IMG/VR virus record: IMGVR_UViG_3300020473_001965 | Location: 62,001 to 126,000 of that record | Strand: one strand, 5' to 3' | Length of the DNA stretch: 64,000 nucleotides | Shown: one piece after another, positions 21,535 through 43,367 of the stretch | Layout: the number at the start of each line of letters is the position of its first letter | Numbering within the stretch: position 1 is the stretch's first letter | Notes under the pieces: generated by a model | What the model was told of the DNA's origin: nothing | Databases searched by the model: none | What the model saw: the letters and a program-made list of their open reading frames with translations, nothing else | Translations under genes and position numbers: made by a program

Positions 21535-21778
21535 AATCAATGTATTCTTCTTTCTTTTTTCTTGACAGTTTTTTAAAAGCTGACTCTGCAATCTGAGCTT
21601 TCGATCTATTTTCATGCGTTTCAAAATAAATCACCGAAACAGGCGTCCTGGGCCTTGTATATTTTGCGCCTGTTCCGCTGTTGTGTTCGCGAGTTCTTCT
21701 AACAATCTCAGTGGTTACACCACAATAGAAAGACCCGTCGGAACATTCCAAAACATACATCTTCCAGGAGTCACTCAT
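21497..21778 (-). CDS. GIY-YIG nuclease (UPF0213-like)
   Basis: MYVLECSDGSFYCG.T....RR..EHNSG.GAKYTR.R.PV. Confidence 0.85.
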   Translation of the reverse strand: MSDSWKMYVLECSDGSFYCGVTTEIVRRTREHNSGTGAKYTRPRTPVSVIYFETHENRSKAQIAESAFKKLSRKKKEEYIDYEEVTRRRSCKV

Positions 21779-23007
21779 CGATCATTCCTAAAACACACGA
21801 ACGTTGGAAATCGTAAAGATCCGTCTGGGGTCACTTCTTGATATCTCACTTCAATCATTCTCCCTACAAATTCTTCTTTATTCGACCAGATCGATGTCCT
21901 CAACTCATCAGAAAAGCCCGACCCTACCTGAACATCGACTCCCTTGTAGTTCACAACAACAGAGCCTAGTTTGCCAGAATGTTTTCCTGTTCCTTCAAGA
22001 AGTGACTGTATTGTCAAATCTACATCGTGGAAAGCTTTTAGCTTCATTACCTCAAAGCCCCTACCAAACTTATAGGGTGCGTCAAGAAACTTTACCATTG
22101 CACCCTCGTAACCCTCTTTCACATAATAATCATGCTGATCTTTTATCTCATCATAAACAGCATCAACAGTGGTTCTCTCCACGGGCTGAACCATTTCGAG
22201 GTCGATAGCGCTCTCTGCCAGACGGTCGAGCAGTGCTTCATATCTAGACTCACTAGGCATTGTTGACTTCTTAGATCTCCATTCTGACAAGGGCAAGAAA
22301 TCAAATAAAGCAAGATAAGTCCCGGACGTATCTTTGTCTTCTTTTCTATACGCTTGACGCATTAGAGAGATGAAGTCAGAACCCATTAGCTCGCCATCAT
22401 AACATCCGTCGCCTAGTTTTAAGAGTTCAGGTGCAATCGTCTGACTGAAGTTTGTGATCAACTTTCCAGATCTTGCGTACATCTTTACATCATTGTTTTC
22501 AACAATACAAAAACATCGAATACCATCTAGCTTGGGTTCAATTGCGACGCTATCCTGATCTTTCAATCTTTTCATGTCAAACTTTTGTGCCAGCGAAACT
22601 TCAAACGTAGAAATAAGCCCAGGATAAACGCTGTTTATTGTCTTGACTGATGCTCCTATTGCCAAATGTTTCTTGAGAATTTTTCTCATCCACACTTCTT
22701 CTTCTTTCGTGACTACACAAAAAGCTGATCTTATGGTTTCAATGGCCGCATTTCCCGTTACTTCTCTAGAAATACATCTGTCTACTGCGGTGAAAAAAGA
22801 GTCCCATCGATCTGCCTCAGACATTGCGATCGTCTTGTCGGACTCTTTGACTCTTGGGACCTTTACAACATTAAACACAATAAAAGGGTCGAAGCTATAG
22901 ACAAAAATCTTCTTGAGCAGATCATTGCTATCATTCTCCAGAAGAATCGACTTCTTAAGATTAGACCCGGAGGAACTTTTAATTTGTTCTAGTATTTCTA
23001 CAATCAT
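21775..23007 (-). CDS. ATP-dependent DNA ligase (T4-like)
   Basis: EPKLDGIRC, DGEL, EGAMVK, KLK, VGSGFSD, SLRFPTF..FR.D. Confidence 0.93.
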   Translation of the reverse strand: MIVEILEQIKSSSGSNLKKSILLENDSNDLLKKIFVYSFDPFIVFNVVKVPRVKESDKTIAMSEADRWDSFFTAVDRCISREVTGNAAIETIRSAFCVVTKEEEVWMRKILKKHLAIGASVKTINSVYPGLISTFEVSLAQKFDMKRLKDQDSVAIEPKLDGIRCFCIVENNDVKMYARSGKLITNFSQTIAPELLKLGDGCYDGELMGSDFISLMRQAYRKEDKDTSGTYLALFDFLPLSEWRSKKSTMPSESRYEALLDRLAESAIDLEMVQPVERTTVDAVYDEIKDQHDYYVKEGYEGAMVKFLDAPYKFGRGFEVMKLKAFHDVDLTIQSLLEGTGKHSGKLGSVVVNYKGVDVQVGSGFSDELRTSIWSNKEEFVGRMIEVRYQEVTPDGSLRFPTFVCFRNDR

Positions 23008-27002: not shown

Positions 27003-27407
27003 TTATTCTTTAGTATTATATTTATCTCTCACTTTGTCAGAAACAGGAATTGCTTCACCATCGCCATCGATTCTAACAAACGTCATCTCTGTAGTCAGGA
27101 CTGTCTTTTGAGAGCCATTATAAACGCTATGTCTCCTCGCCTCTAATTTAATCGTAATAGACCTTGTTCCTACGCGGTCGACTTCACCGTAGATTTTGAT
27201 GATCTGACCTGGTCTTACGGGCTTATTAAAGACAACCTCTGATATCTTTTTTGTTACCATTCTGGGTGTGTCACAAGCCTGGCATGCGAATGCTGCTCCA
27301 GCTTCATCAAGCCAAGCGAGCATCGTCCCGCCGAATAGATTACCGTGATAACCTACATTAGCAGCTTTGCAAAAATGTGTAGAAATTAATTCCATTTCTA
27401 AGAGCAC
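27003..27407 (-). CDS. Acyl-CoA thioesterase (hotdog fold)
   Basis: GNLFGG.ML.WLDEAG, F.KPV.PG, VG.RS, TFV.ID.DG. Confidence 0.85.
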   Translation of the reverse strand: MLLEMELISTHFCKAANVGYHGNLFGGTMLAWLDEAGAAFACQACDTPRMVTKKISEVVFNKPVRPGQIIKIYGEVDRVGTRSITIKLEARRHSVYNGSQKTVLTTEMTFVRIDGDGEAIPVSDKVRDKYNTKE

Positions 27408-27433: not shown

Positions 27434-27784
27434 ATGCGCGTAAATCACAAACTTAAGGAAGGTGACTTAGTCAAGTTGAAAATATATAGAAAGTCATTTA
27501 CAAGTGATGGATTTTCTACGCTAGGTTATCACCCCAACCCGATGTACGGTGCTCTTTACGAGTATATCAATATTCAAACCTACCCTAGTTGTAGAGACTT
27601 CTTAGGCAGAAGCGTTGCAGTCAAGCATAATCAAGAAGCGATGGTTCTAAAATATATTGGAAGACCCTTAACGCTACAGAACCCTGCATATTCAGACTAC
27701 GACATTTACGAGGTGTTAGTCAATGGCTATACTTGCTATGTTTTTAATTACAACATTGAGCCAGTATGCATCAAATCGGAATAA
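27434..27784 (+). CDS. SH3-like hypothetical protein
   Basis: LKEGDLVKL...YEVLVNG. Confidence 0.5.
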   Translation: MRVNHKLKEGDLVKLKIYRKSFTSDGFSTLGYHPNPMYGALYEYINIQTYPSCRDFLGRSVAVKHNQEAMVLKYIGRPLTLQNPAYSDYDIYEVLVNGYTCYVFNYNIEPVCIKSE

Positions 27785-28272
27785 GCGACAAACTAGAAAT
27801 CAAGACATCTTCAATACAGGGTGCGGGTTTAGGTGTATTTGCAAAAGCCGATATTCCGGCGGGGACTATTATTGAGACTTGCCCTGTAAAGCTTCTAAGC
27901 ACCTTCATTCTTGATGACGATGATATGCACAAGACATGGTTGATAGATTACACGTTTTCATGGAATGAAAAATTTGCAGCCGTTTGCTTTGGATGGGGTA
28001 GTTTTTACAACCACAGCGAAGAATACAACACGCACTATTCATGTCAGGAAGAGCCCATGGGAATTAGTTTTAAAACTGTCAAGCGTGTAAAGAAGGGTGA
28101 AGAACTATTTATTCGCTATCGTCACCCAAGCAGGTATCATGAGCTTGATTTTATCGAAATACAAGAGCATCAAAGCTCACCTGACAAATCGTATACAGAT
28201 CGTACCAAAAGCAACATACAAAGAAGGCGTCTAAATAGAGATGGTTCTCTCAAAGACTACCTCAAGCGCTAG
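27766..28272 (+). CDS. SET-domain protein-lysine methyltransferase
   Basis: GAGLGVFA..DI..G, FYNHS, KKGEELFIRY. Confidence 0.85.
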   Translation: MHQIGISDKLEIKTSSIQGAGLGVFAKADIPAGTIIETCPVKLLSTFILDDDDMHKTWLIDYTFSWNEKFAAVCFGWGSFYNHSEEYNTHYSCQEEPMGISFKTVKRVKKGEELFIRYRHPSRYHELDFIEIQEHQSSPDKSYTDRTKSNIQRRRLNRDGSLKDYLKR

Positions 28273-29930
28273 CTTTTCGACAAACAGCGCTTAAAATCTT
28301 TAGGGAAGAAGCTGGAATTCATTCTGTAGAACCTGTCAAAATCTGCATCTAGTATGTATGAAACTGCGTGGTCATCAGATGATCTCACGCTTCTGCCTAC
28401 AGACTGAACTATTGATTTAGCTGTTTGAAGCGGGTACCACTTCTTCCACTTGTTCATTCGCTTCTTGACTAATTTGTCTCCCAAGTAAGGATAGGGCACC
28501 TTGCATATTATTTGAAATCTGCTTGCATCACCTTTAAGATCCACCCCTTCAGTCATCGAAGGTGAAAGCAAAACAGTGTCCTTGTCACCATGTATATGCT
28601 TATAAAGAATTTCGTCTCGATTCTCACTATTGTGAGTTAAAATTCTCGAACTTCTAATATTGCGTTTGAGATGGTTTACCACCTTGTAAGAGTGGCAGTG
28701 AATAATTCCCTTTTCATTCTTGTGAGCAGCCATTATCATCTTGACTGCTTGAACAATGTTCGGCAAAGATTTGTCAATCACTTTCGATGACATACTCCCG
28801 ATAGGATTAAAAAGGATGGGTCGATTTTCTACAGGGAAAGGTGACGGTATACTGATGAAAGCTGTCTCTTCTTTCGGGATGCCCAAAGACTGGCAAAAGA
28901 CTTCGTGATCAAGTATTGTTGCTGACATCAGCAAAACACGCTCGCCCAACCGAAACAAATACTCGGTCGCGTATCCTGAAACGTCGATTGATTTAAAGAC
29001 AAACTTTCTAGACTTCCGTTCCCAGCTCACCTCTTCATCAAACACCCAGTTATCTTTGTTATAATATCTCAAAAAGTTTTCAAGCTTTGTGACATGACCT
29101 CGGAGCATGTCGTAATGTCGAGCAATAGTTTTTAATTCTTTCATTTTTTGAGTAAGATCAATCTTCTCTATTTGCTTTTCCATGTGTGAAAGCTGCGCTT
29201 TTGCTTTTGGAAAGTATACATCTTTCACCCAACGGAAAGCCTGAAATTGAGTTTGGTGCTTTGGCAAAGAAGTCTTCAAGACTGACTTGACAAACCTGTC
29301 AGTAATTGTCACTTCAACGAATCTACTTAATTCCGTTTCGACGTTGTGAGCCTCGTCGATTACTAAAAAACGTCGAGGAGAAATCTTTCCTGAGTATGCT
29401 GCTTCCGTCATGAAATATGGGAAATTACTCACGCTTTCACTAGATTCAAGGTACTTCTTTTTCTCTTCTTTGTAATTGCAGTTGAACGTGCATGCTTTAA
29501 AAAACCTTGAATCTCTTTCAGCAGTCTTTAGTAGCTGCTGACTCTGATTGCATGTATTGCGCTTATGAAAGCCACACGTGTAATTGGTTGAAGACTTGAT
29601 GGATCTCATCTTTCCGGAAGGTGCCCCGAAATCAGAAACATACTGATGTTGCAGGATCTTTTGGGTAGTTACGAACCACGATCCCAAATCATAATCATCA
29701 GACTTTTTTAGGCCACTATTTATCTGTCGCCCTAGCGTCAAACCTATTGCAGACTTGCCAACGCCCGTTCCTGCCTCGAGGACCACAAATCTCTTACCAG
29801 AATTATAAGCTTCAATCGCCAAGTCAATTGCTTGAACTTGTTCATCTCTTATCTTTTCGTAAGGAAAGAACTGCAAATAGTTATCACCACTGATCATCTT
29901 GTCCCACCCAGTCCTTAAATTTTTCGTCAC
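28269..29930 (-). CDS. DinG/XPD-family Fe-S helicase
   Basis: EAGTGVGKS, four Cys, IDEAH, MSAT, EGVD, KVPYP, QSVGRSVRS.DD. Confidence 0.9.
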   Translation of the reverse strand: MTKNLRTGWDKMISGDNYLQFFPYEKIRDEQVQAIDLAIEAYNSGKRFVVLEAGTGVGKSAIGLTLGRQINSGLKKSDDYDLGSWFVTTQKILQHQYVSDFGAPSGKMRSIKSSTNYTCGFHKRNTCNQSQQLLKTAERDSRFFKACTFNCNYKEEKKKYLESSESVSNFPYFMTEAAYSGKISPRRFLVIDEAHNVETELSRFVEVTITDRFVKSVLKTSLPKHQTQFQAFRWVKDVYFPKAKAQLSHMEKQIEKIDLTQKMKELKTIARHYDMLRGHVTKLENFLRYYNKDNWVFDEEVSWERKSRKFVFKSIDVSGYATEYLFRLGERVLLMSATILDHEVFCQSLGIPKEETAFISIPSPFPVENRPILFNPIGSMSSKVIDKSLPNIVQAVKMIMAAHKNEKGIIHCHSYKVVNHLKRNIRSSRILTHNSENRDEILYKHIHGDKDTVLLSPSMTEGVDLKGDASRFQIICKVPYPYLGDKLVKKRMNKWKKWYPLQTAKSIVQSVGRSVRSSDDHAVSYILDADFDRFYRMNSSFFPKDFKRCLSKS

Positions 29931-30315
29931 CGCCCCGGATAGTCCAGTCAGAATCTATCGTTAACTTAGACGATATTCCGCCGCGAGGGTTGAACAACAT
30001 TGTCAATCTAAGTCTGTTTGGTTCATAAGCCTTCATAATATCATCGTAAACAACATTAATCAAGCGCTCATAAGAAATAATTGAATTTCGAAACTGATAA
30101 AAATATTGTTTTAAAGATTTTAGCTCGATCACTTTTTCATTGGGATAGAACGTCATATAAACTTGTGCATAGTCTGGTTGATTTTTCACACCTAAAAAAG
30201 TCAACTCAGGATTTTTTATTTTTATTTCGTACCCTTGCCTTGTTGGATTTACTATTGTTGTTAGGATCGACGGATCGCTCCACCTTCTTTTTCCTGAGTC
30301 TTGTTGTTTTGCCAC
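29884..30315 (-). CDS. queF: QueF-like T-fold protein lacking the catalytic Cys
   Basis: PELTFLGVKNQPDYA, ELKSLKQYF..FRN, PRGGIS. Confidence 0.75.
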   Translation of the reverse strand: MAKQQDSGKRRWSDPSILTTIVNPTRQGYEIKIKNPELTFLGVKNQPDYAQVYMTFYPNEKVIELKSLKQYFYQFRNSIISYERLINVVYDDIMKAYEPNRLRLTMLFNPRGGISSKLTIDSDWTIRGGDEKFKDWVGQDDQW

Positions 30316-30643
30316 CGTGAGTTTTCCTCCTAGATTCTTTCTTAATAATACAGCTGTCATATACAAATGTACTATCTCCTGGGCCTTTAAAGGGGATTGA
30401 CCATTTCTTTCTCAGCAGGTCTGCTTCATGCTGATACACAACTTCTGACTCCCAACCAGAATATCCTGGCCAGCCCATTGACATTTTAAACCCCACACGC
30501 TTCGGAGGTGTTGGTTTGACAACGACTCTCTTTACAAGCCTTACGTGAATATGAGGAATTGCGTCTCCAGCGATGGACTTTACTAAGACTATATCGCCTT
30601 CTTTGTATCTACGTGTTTTCTTATCTTTCATCTGGTTTGCCAC
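30206..30643 (-). CDS. SH3-like hypothetical protein
   Basis: YKEGDIVLV. Confidence 0.45.
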   Translation of the reverse strand: MANQMKDKKTRRYKEGDIVLVKSIAGDAIPHIHVRLVKRVVVKPTPPKRVGFKMSMGWPGYSGWESEVVYQHEADLLRKKWSIPFKGPGDSTFVYDSCIIKKESRRKTHGGKTTRLRKKKVERSVDPNNNSKSNKARVRNKNKKS

Positions 30644-32094: not shown

Positions 32095-33726
32095 TCAAGT
32101 CTTGGTTGCTTCATCTTCTTGATATTCTGTTAGCTCACGAGCAGACGGATCGTTCACATCTGACCAGTTGGGCATCCAAAATTTTGGTATCGTTAACGTT
32201 GCAGGTTTTCCAAAGAATTTCTCAAAGACCTTCCTATAATAATAGCTTTCTTTCAACACGGGTGTGCACGGGTGAAGTCGACTCCCATGTTTTGCAAACT
32301 CACCGTCTGAGACTACAGTGTTTACATGTTGCTGAATTATTTTGTGCCAAGAGTTTTCCCTTGTGGATACTGCATCAGAAAAAGCGCACTTAGTTCTATT
32401 AAGCACATCAAGTGGCAAGAGGCCTGTCTCAGAAAAAGCAGATCGAAGCAAGTTCTTTTCAGGGACTTCTCCGCCAAATCGCTTTAAGCCCACTGGAAGG
32501 CTCATATAATAGTCTACGAAATCTCGATCAAGAAAGGGTGTTCTTGCTTCGAGGCCGTGCGACGATACAGATCTGTCTGATCGGAGGACATCATAGATAT
32601 GGATTTCTCGCAATAGCTTTAAGTTTTCTTCAAAAAACGCTGCGTTGCTCGGTGCATTTATATTATAAAGATAGCCCATAGCAACTTCATCAGACCCATC
32701 TCCGTTGAACACCACCTTGACGTCAGTGTTCTCCTTAATATATTTCCCTACAAGATAATTCCCCACCGATGCTCTCACTGTTGTCGTGTCATACGATTCA
32801 ATGCTGTAGATTACCGCTTCTATTGCATCAACAAACTCTTGAGCGGTCGCTTCAACAACATGATGGTCAGAGCCTATCCAGTCTGCAACCTTTTGTGCAT
32901 AGACGACATCAGGACTGCCCGGCATTCCAATTGAAAACGTTTTTATTCTTTCGCTTGTCATAGAGTTGGCAAGGCTCGCTATCAGACTAGAGTCTAGGCC
33001 GCCTGATAGAAGACAGCCTATTTCTCTGTCAGACATCATTCTCTTTTCTACAGCTGATGTTAAAAGATTTTGTATCTGTGTCGTTGCTTCTTCAAAGCTT
33101 GCATTGTTATCGGGTTTATAGTCACAATCAAAATAACTGTAAAACGACTGGGGCGTTTCAGACGACCACCAAGAGCCCGGTGGAAAGTGTTGTATCTTTT
33201 CTGCGATATCAGACATTGCCTTGATCTCAGAAGCTACAAAATATTCACCAGAAGATGCTCCAAAGAAGCTTGGTCGTACTCCGTAACGATCTCTAGCTGA
33301 GTAAAGTATTCCTTCCTTTTTGTCGTATAAGGACAGTGCGAATACTCCGTCGAGCTCTCTACATGTTCTGTTCATTCCAAACTTAGCAAACATGTGTATT
33401 ATAATTTCGCAATCAGAGTTTGTCTCTGTCTTGAAATTGTACTTCTCGCTGAGCGTTTTGTGATTGTAAATCTCTCCGTTGCAAATCAACCAGTACCTTT
33501 GAAGGTTGGCTTTTCTTAAGTTCATTGGCTGGCCGGACTTTTCGTCTAACCCATTAATTGCAAGACGATGGAACCAGAGCACAGCCCTTGCCTTTGATTT
33601 TAAAGTGAGCTTGTTTTTAAATTCTTCAAATTCTGTCTTGTCGGGTCCACGGTGCTGAATTTTTGTAAAATGCTTGTCCAGCTCCCGCAAACTTCTATTC
33701 CCTAGATAACCTACAAACCCACACAT
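32095..33726 (-). CDS. asnB: Asparagine synthase (glutamine-hydrolysing)
   Basis: N-terminal MCG, HRGPD, NGEIYN, RD.YGVRP, LLSGGLDSS, GDGSDE, EARTPFLD. Confidence 0.92.
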   Translation of the reverse strand: MCGFVGYLGNRSLRELDKHFTKIQHRGPDKTEFEEFKNKLTLKSKARAVLWFHRLAINGLDEKSGQPMNLRKANLQRYWLICNGEIYNHKTLSEKYNFKTETNSDCEIIIHMFAKFGMNRTCRELDGVFALSLYDKKEGILYSARDRYGVRPSFFGASSGEYFVASEIKAMSDIAEKIQHFPPGSWWSSETPQSFYSYFDCDYKPDNNASFEEATTQIQNLLTSAVEKRMMSDREIGCLLSGGLDSSLIASLANSMTSERIKTFSIGMPGSPDVVYAQKVADWIGSDHHVVEATAQEFVDAIEAVIYSIESYDTTTVRASVGNYLVGKYIKENTDVKVVFNGDGSDEVAMGYLYNINAPSNAAFFEENLKLLREIHIYDVLRSDRSVSSHGLEARTPFLDRDFVDYYMSLPVGLKRFGGEVPEKNLLRSAFSETGLLPLDVLNRTKCAFSDAVSTRENSWHKIIQQHVNTVVSDGEFAKHGSRLHPCTPVLKESYYYRKVFEKFFGKPATLTIPKFWMPNWSDVNDPSARELTEYQEDEATKT

Positions 33727-34616: not shown

Positions 34617-34692
34617 TGGAGCGGGTGATGGGACTCGAACCCACAACGTACAGCTTGGAAGGCTGTCACTCTACCAGTTGAGTTACACCCGC
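34617..34692 (-). tRNA. tRNA-Gly (TCC)
   Basis: GCGGGTGTAACTCAACTGGTAGAGTGACAGCCTTCCAAGCTGTACGTTGTGGGTTCGAGTCCCATCACCCGCTCCA; cloverleaf with CCA. Confidence 0.95.
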
Positions 34693-34701
34693 AATTCGTC
34701 G

Positions 34702-35130
34702 CTATTCTTGAATATCTACAAGCTCTATTTCAAAATTTAAAGTTTTCCCTGCAAGCGGGTGATTAAAGTCGATAACAGCTTCTTCGTCTGTGAAAGAGCT
34801 GATTACTCCTCGGAACGTTCCCGTCTCATTTTGTGCCTGAACTACTCCGCCTACAGCAAATTCCATCTCTTCAGGAAACTGGGTCCTGGGAACAGTTGCA
34901 ACTGCTTGTTCGTCAATGGGTCCGTAAGCATTGTCAGGTTCGATTGTAACATTTTTCACTTCTCCTACTTGCATTCCTAAAAGCGCAGAATCAAATCCTC
35001 CAATAACTCTACCCTCGCCTACCTGAAATTCTAGAGGCATTTCTCTATCATAAGAGTTATCAAACTCCATTCCATCATCGAGTGTTCCTCGATAGTGAAC
35101 GCTAACTGTATTTCCGTTTTCTACTTTCAT
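34702..35130 (-). CDS. FKBP-type peptidyl-prolyl isomerase (SlyD/SlpA-like)
   Basis: VSVHYRGTLDDG.EFDNS, AYG, DFNHPLAGKTLNFEIEL. Confidence 0.92.
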   Translation of the reverse strand: MKVENGNTVSVHYRGTLDDGMEFDNSYDREMPLEFQVGEGRVIGGFDSALLGMQVGEVKNVTIEPDNAYGPIDEQAVATVPRTQFPEEMEFAVGGVVQAQNETGTFRGVISSFTDEEAVIDFNHPLAGKTLNFEIELVDIQE

Positions 35131-35172
35131 TTTTCCTTCTTTCTTTTGTGCATTTTGCACGGTTATTAGTGC

Positions 35173-35415
35173 TTAACGCACAACTTTTAGTTTTTCTACC
35201 CAGACTGGCAAAGATAACTCGGACCGACCAGATCCGTAAATTGCACTCTCTGGTACTTTGAATGGTACTAGTTCGTCTGAACCGCCTACCCAGTGCAATC
35301 TATCTGCAACTACATCGAACAAGAGTGTTTCTTGATCTTCAGTGGGATAATAGAACCCGTTGTAGCCGCGCTTGCTCATTCGAACTGTGTCACCTTTTTT
35401 GATTGTAATTTTCAT
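35173..35415 (-). CDS. Small SH3-like protein
   Basis: IKKGDTVRM. Confidence 0.5.
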   Translation of the reverse strand: MKITIKKGDTVRMSKRGYNGFYYPTEDQETLLFDVVADRLHWVGGSDELVPFKVPESAIYGSGRSELSLPVWVEKLKVVR

Positions 35416-35425
35416 TTGATGCTCC

Positions 35426-35794
35426 TCAGCAACCTTTTAAAACGTCTATTTCTTCCCAGGCACCCTGCCAGTTTGTGTACCTGACTTTAGCTATCCCAGC
35501 CTTTTTCATCTCTTGCATGCAGAGATAACATGGGCGTGCCATTGTCCATCGATGATCATGCTTTGTAAATCTAATAACTTCAATTTCATCTCCCGGTTTT
35601 GCAAATCTCAATACATTCATTTCTGCGTGCATGTGCGAAGCCCATGTACCATCCTCATATTGTCGCTTAAACCTTGGGTGAGTCTTATCAGTATTTTCAC
35701 CTATCTTCACGACCTTGCCTTTTCTTCGTAAGATAGCAGCCAAATGATAGGTTCTACCATTGCTGATCGCTTTTTCTTTAGCTCGATAGTACAC
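35426..35794 (-). CDS. Zn-dependent deaminase (cytidine/dCMP deaminase fold)
   Basis: HAE and ARPCxxC motifs. Confidence 0.75.
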   Translation of the reverse strand: MYYRAKEKAISNGRTYHLAAILRRKGKVVKIGENTDKTHPRFKRQYEDGTWASHMHAEMNVLRFAKPGDEIEVIRFTKHDHRWTMARPCYLCMQEMKKAGIAKVRYTNWQGAWEEIDVLKGC

Positions 35795-35815
35795 TTGGCA
35801 TGATGCCCTCCTTAG

Positions 35816-35903
35816 TGGCGGAAGCGGTGAGATTCGAACTCACGATACGTTTCCGTATGCCGGTTTTCAAGACCGGTGCCTTAAGCCGCTCGGCCACGCT
35901 TCC
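35816..35903 (-). tRNA. tRNA-Ser (TGA)
   Basis: GGAAGCGTGGCCGAGCGG...CTTGAAA...GTTCGAATC...CTTCCGCCA; long variable arm. Confidence 0.95.
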
Positions 35904-35905
35904 AG

Positions 35906-36505
35906 TTAAACTTTCCATAATCCTGACTGATTTCCAATACCAGTCCATCTTGGCCGGACGGTTCGTGAATAGAGATCCAAGTATGGACCTTTGCTTCTTT
36001 CCTCAACAAAAGAGTAAAATTCTTCAGGCTTTCGAGAATGCTGTCGCCTCTGAGCGAAAATATAATCCTTAGAACCGCACAGACCCTTTCCGTTGGGAAC
36101 TGACTCTTTCTCATTTGTCCCTGAATACCTTGTTCTTTTTCCCATTCCCTTTCGATATCTTACAGCAAAAATACACATCTCAGTGTATCTCATTCCGTAC
36201 GGGGTAGGGCTTCCCACATTTGACTTTACCCATGGGATCAAGCTGATTGGTTTGAAACCTAGCGCATCACAAACTTCAAGCGCAGGTAAAATCCCTTGAT
36301 CTTTCCCAGCTGTAAATGAATTAACTGTCCACATGTACATATGGGCTTCAGGAGCGACAGGATGCTTCTTAAACCACTCTGATATCGTGCAAATTATCTC
36401 GCCCTTAGACTGAACATTGTAATGAGTCGAAGGTTGTAAAGTTGCATGACCCACACCCCCTGTGGTCTTTCTCCAAGGTGGGTCTATTACGATAGTTTTA
36501 TACAT
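35906..36505 (-). CDS. MT-A70-family N6-adenine methyltransferase
   Basis: IVIDPPW, HSRKPEEFY, LDLYSR..R..W...GNQ. Confidence 0.85.
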   Translation of the reverse strand: MYKTIVIDPPWRKTTGGVGHATLQPSTHYNVQSKGEIICTISEWFKKHPVAPEAHMYMWTVNSFTAGKDQGILPALEVCDALGFKPISLIPWVKSNVGSPTPYGMRYTEMCIFAVRYRKGMGKRTRYSGTNEKESVPNGKGLCGSKDYIFAQRRQHSRKPEEFYSFVEERSKGPYLDLYSRTVRPRWTGIGNQSGLWKV

Positions 36506-36520
36506 AGCTTATCCATAAAA

Positions 36521-36596
36521 TGGCTCCCCGAGCAGGACTTGAACCTACGACCCGCTGATTAACAGTCAGCTGCTCTACCAACTGAGCTATCGGGGA
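36521..36596 (-). tRNA. tRNA-Asn (GTT)
   Basis: TCCCCGATAGCTCAGTTGGTAGAGCAGCTGACTGTTAATCAGCGGGTCGTAGGTTCAAGTCCTGCTCGGGGAGCCA. Confidence 0.95.

Positions 36597-40969: not shown

Positions 40970-43367
<2,398 letters not shown>

What the first reader, a model, noticed from the sequence alone, without database searches (positions are those of the whole stretch)
29884..30315. QueF homologue with the catalytic cysteine replaced
Seen: PELTFLGVKNQPDYA where canonical QueF has PEFTSLCPxTGQPDFA (Cys to Gly plus a 1-aa deletion), and SYE where FHE is typical. The E-x-K-S-L-K motif and PRGGI are kept, and the protein has no Cys at all. Established: that Cys forms the thioimide needed for preQ0 reduction. 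Inference: a pseudo-enzyme that binds preQ0/preQ1, a dominant-negative subunit that diverts 7-deazaguanine flux, or new chemistry.
Basis: partly seen in the sequence, partly recalled or inferred. Interest (0 to 1): 0.6.

Follow-up and report, generated by a model that had tools for sequence, protein, structure and literature searches.

The report
QueF look-alike likely replacing MetF
This phage gene belongs to a large, conserved, cysteine-less branch of the QueF enzyme family that has nothing to do with queuosine. Gene-neighbourhood and presence/absence patterns point to the folate step normally done by MetF, which makes 5-methyl-tetrahydrofolate for methionine and SAM synthesis.

Summary
Window 29884-30315 (minus strand) encodes a 143-aa, cysteine-free QueF-family protein. 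Catalytic Cys55 is Gly and the loop is one residue shorter. The QueF NADPH motif, Asp62, Glu97 and PRGG are kept.

It is neither decay nor a one-off. The Gly form is a single clade in the tree, with thousands of members in phages and bacteria (Bacteroidota, Myxococcota, Syntrophorhabdus, SAR202).

It is not tied to 7-deazaguanines:
- This phage has no TGT/DpdA, QueC, FolE or QueD.
- None of 33 large carrier phage contigs has TGT.
- 31 of 46 carrier bacteria lack QueC.

It is tied to methionine and folate genes:
- In Cytophagales and Flavobacteriales it sits between the two halves of a split MetH, behind a SAM riboswitch.
- Elsewhere it lies next to MetK, AhcY, Cys/Met PLP enzymes or ThyX.
- In three genome samples from two phyla, 47 of 49 carriers lack MetF, against 21 of 363 non-carriers.

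Best explanation (confidence about 0.6): a flavin-free, NAD(P)H-dependent T-fold 5,10-methylene-THF reductase. It would keep only the imine-reduction half of QueF chemistry and serve here as a phage auxiliary methyl-cycle gene. No biochemistry exists. I found no paper describing this.

The parts
29884..30315 (-). Gene for the 143-aa Cys-less QueF-like T-fold protein (GTG start, stop included); proposed 5,10-methylene-THF reductase
30326..30331 (-). Shine-Dalgarno AGGAGG, 10 nt upstream of the GTG start
30172..30207 (-). Active-site loop ELTFLGVKNQPD. Gly42 (30190-30192) replaces catalytic Cys55 and the loop is one residue shorter. Asp48 = QueF Asp62 (proton donor) is kept. F40, G42 and QPD are invariant or nearly so in the clade.
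30103..30126 (-). ELKSLKQY = the QueF motif E(S/L)K(S/A)hK(L/Y)(Y/F/W), the family's NADPH-associated signature, fully kept
30064..30075 (-). SYER: Glu83 = QueF Glu97, the anchor for the 2-amino-4-oxo-pyrimidine edge, is kept. The stacking Phe95 is replaced by Ser81, and Asp98 by the clade-specific Arg84.
29977..29988 (-). PRGG motif, shared with canonical QueF and invariant in the clade (R111 G112 G113)

Best explanation
The gene encodes a member of a distinct Cys-less subfamily of QueF-like T-fold proteins. The subfamily no longer acts on preQ0. It most likely works as a flavin-independent, NAD(P)H-dependent 5,10-methylenetetrahydrofolate reductase, a non-homologous substitute for MetF that supplies 5-methyl-THF to methionine synthase.

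Inferred mechanism:
- The conserved Glu83 anchors the 2-amino-4-oxo-pyrimidine edge of the pterin, as Glu97 anchors preQ0.
- Asp48 (QueF Asp62) protonates the substrate to open the imidazolidine ring, giving the N5-iminium.
- NAD(P)H, bound through the retained QueF motif, delivers a hydride to the exocyclic carbon.

This is the same chemistry as the last QueF step, hydride transfer to a non-covalently bound imine. N5 of a pterin corresponds to position 7 of a 7-deazaguanine. The cysteine is needed only to activate a nitrile, so it is dispensable. Cys -> Gly, the one-residue loop deletion and Phe95 -> Ser would enlarge the pocket for the six-membered ring and the pABA-Glu tail. Arg84 could bind a folate carboxylate.

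In the phage it would be an auxiliary metabolic gene that pushes one-carbon units into the Met/SAM cycle, or, run in reverse, rebalances the folate pool for the phage's ThyX.

Shown here: family membership, residue pattern, clade conservation, independence from the preQ0 pathway, the genomic link to Met/SAM/folate genes, and complementarity with MetF. Inferred: substrate, cofactor, direction and mechanism.
For: 1. Conserved single clade, not decay.
- G42, QPD, S67, K69, P99 and RGG are invariant; E37, T39, F40, E64-K66, Y71, R76 and S81-Y82-E83-R84 are nearly invariant in 30 diverse members.
- The Cys/Gly state changes once on a 184-row tree: 151 Gly rows against 33 Cys rows, SH-aLRT 89.9.

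2. Not a deazaguanine gene.

3. Gene neighbourhood.
- In 16 of 62 bacterial loci the gene lies between the homocysteine-binding half (PF02574) and the pterin/B12/activation half of a split MetH; a 17th (L104) has the upstream half and MetH_C only as a tblastn hit. The upstream gap is 0 nt and the downstream gap about 26 nt.
- A SAM riboswitch sits directly upstream of the operon in 6 of 6 loci tested.
- Other loci put it next to a full-length MetH, MetK, Cys/Met PLP enzymes or ThyX.
- About 24 of 81 phage loci have MetK, AhcY or a PNP_UDP_1-family enzyme adjacent.
- None of 14 canonical QueF loci checked has Met/SAM genes.

4. Complementarity with MetF (PF02219).
- Cyclobacteriaceae, 151 genomes: carrier/no MetF 9, carrier/MetF 2, non-carrier/no MetF 5, non-carrier/MetF 135.
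- A Myxococcota order, 110 genomes: 27, 0, 4, 79.
- A second Bacteroidota order, 151 genomes: 11, 0, 12, 128.
- Pooled Fisher p = 1e-42, not corrected for phylogeny.
- In the two genomes with both genes, MetF lies within 2-3 kb of the variant (directly after MetH_C in G063).

5. Controls. FolD is present in 108 of 110 Myxococcota, including all 27 carriers. MetH is present in 5 of 5 carriers tested that lack MetF, so they need methyl-THF.

6. Chemistry. The NADPH-associated motif, Asp and Glu are kept. The final QueF step is hydride transfer to a free imine (PMC13740343).

7. The phage uses folate: it has two ThyX genes.
Against: - No biochemical or genetic data exist. Substrate, cofactor and direction are inferred.
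- The co-occurrence tests are not phylogenetically corrected. Carriers may form a few clades, although they are spread over at least four phyla and look interleaved with MetF-bearing genomes in the sample order.
- The exclusion is not universal. 22 of 46 carrier genomes found by the pattern scan do have MetF, notably Marinilabiliaceae. There the gene lies next to rhodanese, TusA-DsrE, aminotransferase class V and AIRS genes rather than Met genes.
- Two Cyclobacteriaceae keep MetF within 2-3 kb of the variant.
- 21 genomes have neither gene, and 7 of the 8 tested with a MetH-specific model (or showing a MetH-sized pterin-binding frame) do have MetH. That fits incomplete assemblies or yet another route.
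- This phage carries no MetK, AhcY or MetH, so here the link rests on homology to the clade (about 70% identity).
- The active site lies at a subunit interface and was not modelled with a ligand.
Confidence: 0.6

Rival explanations
1. It catalyses or assists a different pterin or folate step needed by methionine synthase. Examples: reduction of another folate or pterin species (dihydrofolate, 5,10-methenyl-THF), making a non-folate methyl-pterin donor, or delivering methyl-THF to the split MetH as a binding protein.
For: The same neighbourhood evidence applies. In G063 and G167 MetF lies within 2-3 kb of the variant, and 22 of 46 carriers have MetF, which a role distinct from MetF would explain. 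T-fold proteins generally bind pterins and purines (one search lists FolE as the next-best fold).
Against: The presence/absence complementarity is specific to MetF in three samples. FolD is not displaced. DHFR was not tested. A pure binding role would not explain the strict conservation of the NADPH-associated motif and the proton-donor Asp.
Confidence: 0.2
2. One reading: a catalytically dead QueF that binds preQ0 or preQ1, or poisons host QueF oligomers, to divert 7-deazaguanine or queuosine flux during infection.
For: The preQ0-contacting Glu97, Glu78 and Asp62 equivalents are kept. The phage carries a tRNA-Asn(GUU), a tRNA type that is a queuosine substrate.
Against: The same clade is chromosomal in at least 62 bacterial species genomes. 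31 of 46 lack QueC, and most have no other QueF to poison. No carrier phage contig has TGT/DpdA. The stacking Phe95 is lost in the whole clade. The gene's neighbours are Met/SAM/folate genes, never que genes.
Confidence: 0.05
3. It is still a preQ0 reductase that uses another nucleophile or a non-covalent route.
For: It passes NCBIfam's equivalog cut-off for preQ(1) synthase. G034 and G036-G038 (L088, L090-L092; Syntrophorhabdus or close relatives by record title) have QueC but only this QueF-family gene.
Against: C55A and C55S abolish activity in B. subtilis QueF (PMC13740343). Most carriers cannot make preQ0. Of the 15 carriers with QueC, 11 show a further QueF-family hit.
Confidence: 0.03
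4. It is a decaying gene or an assembly error in this contig.
For: None beyond the missing cysteine. The 5' end overlaps an upstream ORF by about 110 nt.
Against: The frame is intact, with a consensus ribosome-binding site. A 99% identical protein is seen on 7 other contigs. The loop motif was found in 116 of the 121 proteins scanned, namely the query and the top 120 of the 3305 word-search hits; the lower-ranked hits include canonical QueFs. Clade-specific invariant residues are all present.
Confidence: 0.01

Closest known systems
Unimodular QueF (YkvM type; B. subtilis QueF, PDB 4F8B/4FGC), NADPH-dependent preQ0 reductase
   Same: Same fold (TM 0.72, rmsd 1.4 A, 34% identity) and same Pfam and NCBIfam hits. 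The QueF motif, Asp62, Glu97, Glu78, FR and PRGG are kept.
   Different: Catalytic Cys55 is Gly and the loop is one residue shorter. Ser53 -> Phe, Phe95 -> Ser, Asp98 -> Arg, Cys99 -> Leu. There is no genomic link to queC/D/E or tgt; the link is to Met/SAM/folate genes instead. It forms one side of a single branch against canonical QueFs.
QueF-L (crenarchaeal archaeosine synthase; also in some phages)
   Same: A QueF homologue recruited to a new reaction, showing that the scaffold can change chemistry.
   Different: QueF-L keeps the cysteine (Cys21), forms the thioimide, acts on preQ0-tRNA and uses ammonia rather than NADPH (PMC5485725). The present clade lacks the Cys and keeps the NADPH-associated motif.
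MetF / MTHFR (PF02219), flavin-dependent TIM-barrel 5,10-methylene-THF reductase
   Same: Proposed to carry out the same reaction. The two show a mutually exclusive genome distribution and the same operon context with MetH under a SAM riboswitch.
   Different: No sequence or fold relationship. The present protein is a 143-aa T-fold with no flavin-binding family hit. Function is inferred, not shown.
Mfr, the flavin-independent MTHFR of mycobacteria (MSMEG_6649 type)
   Same: A precedent for direct NAD(P)H-to-methylene-THF hydride transfer without flavin (abstracts of PMC11094777 and PMC10586308).
   Different: Mfr is a (beta-alpha)8 barrel distantly related to MetF and restricted mainly to Actinobacteria (PMC7857596). 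This protein is a T-fold.
GTP cyclohydrolase I (FolE)
   Same: The T-fold relative that binds purine or pterin at the same kind of site, and the next-best structural match. PHROGs files the phage homologues under 'GTP cyclohydrolase'.
   Different: No Pfam PF01227 hit. The protein has no cysteine at all, so FolE's zinc-ligand cysteines cannot be present (FolE's zinc site is stated from general knowledge). It has the QueF-specific motif.

Membership tests
QueF, preQ0 reductase (EC 1.7.1.13; TIGR03139 / PF14489) | QueF-type T-fold domain | tested here: met
   PF14489 E 1.6e-21; TIGR03139 93.7 bits against an 86.9 cut-off; Foldseek to 4F8B/4FGC TM 0.72
QueF, preQ0 reductase (EC 1.7.1.13; TIGR03139 / PF14489) | Invariant catalytic cysteine (Cys55 in B. 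subtilis) that forms the thioimide | tested here: not met
   Gly42 aligns to Cys55. The protein has no Cys. Gly is invariant in the clade. C55A and C55S are inactive (PMC13740343).
QueF, preQ0 reductase (EC 1.7.1.13; TIGR03139 / PF14489) | QueF motif E(S/L)K(S/A)hK(L/Y)(Y/F/W), plus invariant Asp62 and Glu97 | tested here: met
   ELKSLKQY, D48 and E83
QueF, preQ0 reductase (EC 1.7.1.13; TIGR03139 / PF14489) | preQ0-stacking Phe95 and redox partner Cys99 | tested here: not met
   Ser81 and Leu85; 'SYE' is found throughout the clade
QueF, preQ0 reductase (EC 1.7.1.13; TIGR03139 / PF14489) | Occurs with the preQ0/queuosine or Dpd pathway (queC/D/E, folE, tgt/dpdA) | tested here: not met
   None in this phage. 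0 of 33 phage contigs have TGT. 31 of 46 carrier bacteria lack QueC.
QueF, preQ0 reductase (EC 1.7.1.13; TIGR03139 / PF14489) | NADPH-dependent reduction of preQ0 to preQ1 | not testable with these tools
   Needs an enzyme assay
QueF-L (archaeosine synthase) | Conserved thioimide-forming Cys; acts on preQ0-tRNA with ammonia | tested here: not met
   No Cys. QueF-L's requirement is taken from PMC5485725.
MetF / MTHFR (PF02219) | Homology to the flavin-binding TIM-barrel MTHFR domain | tested here: not met
   QueF is the only Pfam hit. The claim is 'works like', not 'is a member'.
MetF / MTHFR (functional role) | Present where folate-dependent methionine synthase needs 5-methyl-THF, and dispensable where another MTHFR exists | tested here: met
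   47 of 49 carriers lack MetF against 21 of 363 non-carriers. MetH is present in 5 of 5 carriers tested. The gene sits in a SAM-riboswitch MetH operon.
MetF / MTHFR (functional role) | Catalyses 5,10-CH2-THF + NAD(P)H -> 5-CH3-THF | not testable with these tools
   Needs complementation of a metF deletion and an in vitro assay
GTP cyclohydrolase I (FolE, PF01227) | Match to the FolE domain | tested here: not met
   No PF01227 hit at E <= 0.01; FolE is only a weaker structural neighbour. The protein has no cysteine, so FolE's Cys zinc ligands (general knowledge) cannot be present.

The most novel reading that the evidence does not exclude
A third, structurally unrelated class of 5,10-methylene-THF reductase exists: a 130-145-aa, flavin-free, cysteine-less T-fold enzyme that evolved once from the nitrile reductase QueF by keeping only its imine-reduction half-reaction. 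It would fill the 'missing MetF' gap in many Bacteroidota, Myxococcota and other bacteria. Marine and freshwater phages, including this roughly 236-kb phage, would carry it as a methyl-cycle auxiliary gene. It is currently annotated as preQ(1) synthase.
Probability: 0.6. Interest if true: 0.87.

Novelty: new variant of a known kind. Interest (0 to 1): 0.8.

Why it matters
If the prediction holds:
1. It identifies a non-homologous replacement for MetF, an enzyme described as the only known route to 5-methyl-THF in most bacteria (PMC7857596). That would close a pathway hole in many genomes that have MetH but no MetF.
2. It gives a clean example of enzyme evolution by subtraction. Losing the nitrile-activating cysteine turns a four-electron nitrile reductase into a two-electron iminium reductase on a pterin.
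3. It adds one-carbon supply to the methyl cycle, alongside phage MetK and AhcY, to the list of phage auxiliary functions.
4. It exposes a systematic misannotation. The clade passes the NCBIfam equivalog cut-off for preQ(1) synthase, which distorts queuosine-pathway reconstructions and virome counts of 'que' genes.
5. A small flavin-free MTHFR could be useful in one-carbon pathway engineering.

Tried and rejected
- Phage DNA modification or queuosine role. Searches for TGT/DpdA, QueC, FolE and QueD in the phage found only the PP-loop of the neighbouring asparagine synthase as a weak QueC-like hit. TGT and QueC in 33 large carrier contigs gave 0 and 1 true hit. Rejected. QueE was not searched, and PF01702 may miss very divergent DpdA.
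- Cultured-phage relatives. tblastn against 50,697 phage records gave hits of at most 39% identity, all annotated QueF or GTP cyclohydrolase; I did not check the catalytic position in them. No nucleotide match for the region.
- Conserved partner upstream. The ORF overlapping the 5' end (30206-30643) is not similar to the ORF in the same position in L003.
- Fixed neighbour in phages. None was found. The neighbours form a shuffled island of MetK, AhcY, PNP_UDP_1, DUF2452, PhoH, GDP-mannose dehydratase, PD-(D/E)XK, glycosyltransferases and cytidylyltransferase/4HBT genes.
- This phage's own genome. No MetK, AhcY, PNP, DUF2452, MetH or PhoH by tblastn.
- Riboswitch link in Myxococcota and Chitinophagales loci. 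Only cobalamin riboswitches 2-3 kb away in two loci, not upstream of the gene. Uninformative.
- First genome-contig scan with the 30-sequence alignment failed for lack of a conserved stretch. It was repeated with a closer 14-sequence alignment.
- Literature. No paper in the held library links QueF or T-fold proteins to MTHFR or methionine synthesis. The MMBR 2024 review of 7-deazaguanines is not held.
- Tools not used. Complex prediction (no binding claim is made), read laying and the look-up of sequencing runs (not needed). No alternative genetic code was used.
- The large representative search was used once because the family scans left the function open.
- One Pfam call failed on a wrong frame and was re-sent without that entry.
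Full report
THE OBJECT. The finding is a minus-strand ORF at window 29884-30315. Its GTG start at 30315 has a consensus AGGAGG 10 nt upstream. The product has 143 aa and no cysteine. It hits Pfam QueF (PF14489, E 1.6e-21). It also passes NCBIfam's equivalog cut-off for 'preQ(1) synthase' (TIGR03139, 93.7 against 86.9 bits). PHROGs files its phage relatives under 'GTP cyclohydrolase'. An AlphaFold2 model built on 30 homologues (pLDDT 90.9) superposes on B. subtilis QueF at rmsd 1.4-1.5 A.

Cys55 is Gly42 and the loop lacks one residue. Asp62 (D48), the QueF motif (E64-Y71), Glu97 (E83) and PRGG are kept. One refinement: Tyr at the His96 position is also common in canonical QueFs, which often read FYE. 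The clade-specific changes are Ser53 -> Phe, Cys55 -> Gly, Phe95 -> Ser, Asp98 -> Arg and Cys99 -> Leu.

THE GENOME. The window is bases 62001-126000 of a 235,672-bp IMG/VR virus record. CheckV estimates 87% completeness and GC is 42.6%. ARAGORN predicts a tmRNA and eight tRNAs, including tRNA-Asn(GUU). Genes near the finding are a DinG/XPD-like helicase, a nucleotidyltransferase, an asparagine synthase, a SET-domain protein and a 4HBT thioesterase. Further off are a GroEL-type chaperonin and an ATP-dependent ligase. It is a jumbo tailed-phage-like genome. No TGT/DpdA, QueC, FolE or QueD was found in it.

NOT A ONE-OFF. The word search returned 3305 relatives. The 120 listed are 61-100% identical, and the loop motif E-x-T-F-x-G-x3-QPD was found in 116 of the 121 proteins scanned (query plus those 120); the other 5 did not match the pattern and were not examined. 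The exhaustive search of 50%-identity representatives found 1672 relatives. The first ~65 rows whose sequence covers the motif are almost all the Gly form; two Cys-bearing sequences stand out higher up (P0154, 37% identity, E 2e-28; P0197, 42%, E 3e-17), and canonical C-x4-QPD sequences become common from about E 1e-16 and at most 44% identity. I used this costly search once because the family scans left the function open.

In an alignment of 30 diverse members, G42, Q46-P47-D48, S67, K69, P99 and R111-G112-G113 are invariant. E37, T39, F40, E64-L65-K66, Y71, R76 and S81-Y82-E83-R84 are nearly so. On a 184-row maximum-likelihood tree the Cys/Gly state changes once: 151 Gly rows lie on one side of a branch against 33 Cys rows (SH-aLRT 89.9). 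Phage and bacterial members interleave, with about 10 changes of that label.

NOT A 7-DEAZAGUANINE GENE. Among 33 large viral contigs that carry the variant (four of them at least 90% complete), none has a TGT-family gene and only one has a real QueC. The clade is also chromosomal in at least 62 bacterial species genomes. These include Cyclobacteriaceae, Marinilabiliaceae, Chitinophagales, Crocinitomicaceae, Flavobacteriales, Syntrophorhabdus, Myxococcota, SAR202 and Pleionea, among them isolates and closed chromosomes. Of 46 such genomes, 31 have no QueC, and in about 30 the variant is the only QueF-family gene. Of the 15 carriers that have QueC, 11 also show a further QueF-family hit, and where positions can be compared it lies beside QueC, as in G050 and G065. 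In G034 and G036-G038 (L088, L090-L092; Syntrophorhabdus or close relatives by record title) the variant is the only QueF-family hit. This removes most of the support for a preQ0/preQ1 sponge, a dominant-negative subunit or a cryptic preQ0 reductase.

WHAT IT TRAVELS WITH. I called ORFs in all fetched loci and clustered the neighbours.

Bacteria:
- 16 of 62 loci (Cytophagales and Flavobacteriales) have the order homocysteine S-methyltransferase domain (PF02574, about 333 aa), then the variant, then Pterin_bind + B12-binding + Met_synt_B12 (about 897 aa); L104 has the upstream half, with MetH_C seen only by tblastn. The gene therefore sits between the two halves of a split MetH. The upstream gap is 0 nt and the downstream gap about 26 nt.
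- In 6 of 6 such loci tested, a SAM (S-box) riboswitch lies immediately upstream of the first gene.
- L134 reads MetK, variant, DUF6580, HcyMT, MetH. L129, L136 and L143 carry parts of the same array.
- The remaining loci place the variant next to a full-length MetH, Cys/Met PLP enzymes, or, in Syntrophorhabdus, ThyX.
- In all, 20 of 62 variant loci have MetH, MetK or AhcY within 6 kb. None of the 14 canonical QueF loci checked does.

Phages:
- About 24 of 81 loci have MetK, AhcY or a PNP_UDP_1-family enzyme next to the gene, in several different arrangements.
- The rest show a shuffled auxiliary-gene island with PhoH, GDP-mannose dehydratase, DUF2452, cytidylyltransferase/4HBT and others.
- This particular phage has none of MetK, AhcY or MetH. 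It does have two ThyX homologues and no ThyA, so it consumes 5,10-methylene-THF.

COMPLEMENTARITY WITH MetF. Genomes that use MetH need 5-methyl-THF, and MetF (PF02219) is described as the only known route in most bacteria (PMC7857596). I cross-tabulated the variant (profile A2, hits at E <= 1e-57) against PF02219 in three samples.

| Sample | Genomes | Carrier, no MetF | Carrier, MetF | Non-carrier, no MetF | Non-carrier, MetF | Fisher p |
|---|---|---|---|---|---|---|
| Cyclobacteriaceae | 151 | 9 | 2 | 5 | 135 | 1e-9 |
| A Myxococcota order | 110 | 27 | 0 | 4 | 79 | 9e-22 |
| A second Bacteroidota order | 151 | 11 | 0 | 12 | 128 | 8e-11 |
| Pooled | 412 | 47 | 2 | 21 | 342 | 1e-42 |

In the two genomes with both genes, MetF lies within 2-3 kb of the variant; in G063 it directly follows MetH_C. 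As controls, FolD is present in 108 of 110 Myxococcota including all 27 carriers, and MetH is present in all 5 carriers tested that lack MetF.

Caveats:
- The tests are not phylogenetically corrected.
- In the initial set of 46 carriers, 22 do have MetF. These include Marinilabiliaceae, where the neighbours are rhodanese, TusA-DsrE, aminotransferase class V and AIRS genes.
- 21 sampled genomes have neither gene. Nine of them were tested: the five Cyclobacteriaceae with Pterin_bind, which is not MetH-specific but found a MetH-sized frame (652-1232 aa) in each, and the four Myxococcota with the MetH activation domain, which hit three (one with an internal TGA). None was found in G280. This is compatible with assembly gaps or a further route.
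- One genome in the Cyclobacteriaceae tally (G175; MetF present, variant not found) is flagged as unpublished.

MECHANISM (INFERENCE). According to the QueF review (PMC13740343), QueF chemistry runs as follows. Cys55 attacks the nitrile to give a thioimide. NADPH reduces it. The C-S bond breaks to release a non-covalently bound imine. A second NADPH then reduces that imine, with Asp62 as proton donor and Glu97, Glu78 and backbone atoms holding the 2-amino-4-oxo-pyrimidine edge.

The Cys-less clade keeps everything needed for that last step and has lost what is needed only for nitrile activation (Cys55 and its redox partner Cys99). From general chemistry, N5 of a pterin corresponds to position 7 of guanine or 7-deazaguanine. 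The N5-iminium formed when 5,10-methylene-THF ring-opens would therefore present its CH2 carbon where QueF presents the imine carbon.

Cys -> Gly, the loop deletion and Phe95 -> Ser would make room for the larger pterin and its tail. The clade-specific Arg84 could bind a carboxylate. Direct flavin-free hydride transfer to methylene-THF has a precedent in the mycobacterial Mfr, which has an unrelated barrel fold (PMC11094777). I therefore propose a T-fold NAD(P)H:5,10-methylene-THF reductase.

For the phage, the most likely use is to push one-carbon units into Met/SAM, consistent with MetK and AhcY neighbours in related phages. A reverse role feeding ThyX cannot be excluded.

COMPARISON WITH KNOWN FAMILIES. 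It belongs to the QueF-like Pfam domain family. It fails the defining catalytic feature and the pathway context of QueF proper, and also of QueF-L, which keeps the cysteine (PMC5485725). It is not homologous to MetF or Mfr, so the claim is 'works like MetF', not 'is a MetF'. I found no paper in the held library that links QueF-like or T-fold proteins to MTHFR or methionine synthesis. The main 7-deazaguanine review could not be read, so prior mention elsewhere cannot be excluded.

VERDICT. The best explanation is a MetF-replacing T-fold reductase (confidence about 0.6). I put about 0.85 on the broader statement that the clade serves folate/methionine metabolism rather than 7-deazaguanine metabolism.

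Noticed in passing
window 30206-30643 (-): The upstream 145-aa ORF has no Pfam or PHROG hit. It runs about 110 nt into the QueF-like gene in another frame and ends in a Lys/Arg-rich tail. An ORF at the same position in L003 also overlaps (41 nt) but is unrelated in sequence. This could be a real overlap or an over-extended ORF.
   Followed up: partly
window 32095-33726 (-) and 34617-36596 (-): A glutamine-dependent asparagine synthase (AsnB type) lies about 3 kb from a cluster of tRNA-Gly(UCC), tRNA-Ser(UGA) and tRNA-Asn(GUU) genes. ARAGORN also predicts a tmRNA elsewhere in the genome (G000:5354-5720).
   Followed up: no
window 27766-28272 (+), 27003-27407 (-), 40970-42556 (-), 21775-23007 (-): The phage encodes a SET-domain protein, a 4HBT thioesterase, a GroEL/Cpn60-type chaperonin and an ATP-dependent DNA ligase. 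The thioesterase belongs to a neighbour family that recurs next to the variant in other phages.
   Followed up: no
window 28269-29930 (-): A DinG/XPD-like helicase (phrog_2488, E 1e-110). Its longest ORF start overlaps the 3' end of the QueF-like gene by 47 nt, so the true start is probably further downstream.
   Followed up: no
G000:C1:57140-57757 (-) and 139266-139850 (-), outside the window: Two ThyX (PF02511) homologues and no ThyA. The second is divergent (65 bits, in a 351-aa frame) and might have a different pyrimidine-modifying role.
   Followed up: partly
L018:6399-6899, and 16 phage loci plus L134, L143, L157: A DUF2452 (PF10504) protein is often the gene immediately downstream of the variant in phages. 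In some bacterial or MAG contigs it sits in an array DUF2452, AhcY, MetK, variant. Its function is unknown, and it could be another methyl-cycle auxiliary gene.
   Followed up: partly
L108, L113, L119, L128, L131 (Marinilabiliaceae): Here the variant heads a block of rhodanese-domain protein (about 350 aa), TusA-DsrE fusion, class-V aminotransferase and AIRS-family protein. This looks like a sulfur or selenium trafficking set rather than Met genes. These genomes keep MetF and a canonical bimodular QueF. The proposed function does not explain this.
   Followed up: partly
L090-L092 (L090, L092 Syntrophorhabdus; L091 a related MAG), for example L092:5219-5944: ThyX lies immediately upstream of the variant. 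G034 and G036-G038 have QueC but no other QueF-family gene. G036-G038 (L090-L092) do have MetF hits; G034 (S. aromaticivorans UI) has none.
   Followed up: partly
G008 (IMGVR_UViG_3300021964_009390, 222 kb, 100% complete): 171145-171777: The only carrier phage with a genuine QueC (E 2e-60). It has no TGT-family hit, and the QueC lies about 120 kb from the variant.
   Followed up: no
L127, L130, L132-L141 (mostly Myxococcota or 'Deltaproteobacteria' MAGs; L135 and L141 carry other record titles): These members are 190-220 aa long because of an N-terminal extension of about 50-70 residues of unknown role. Representatives with long extensions, or of about 290-390 aa (for example P0138, P0145 and the L145 ORF), suggest fusions.
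   Followed up: no
NCBIfam TIGR03139 against P0001: The Cys-less clade scores above the equivalog cut-off for 'preQ(1) synthase'. JGI names several members '7-cyano-7-deazaguanine reductase'. This is probably a systematic misannotation in genome and virome annotation.
   Followed up: yes
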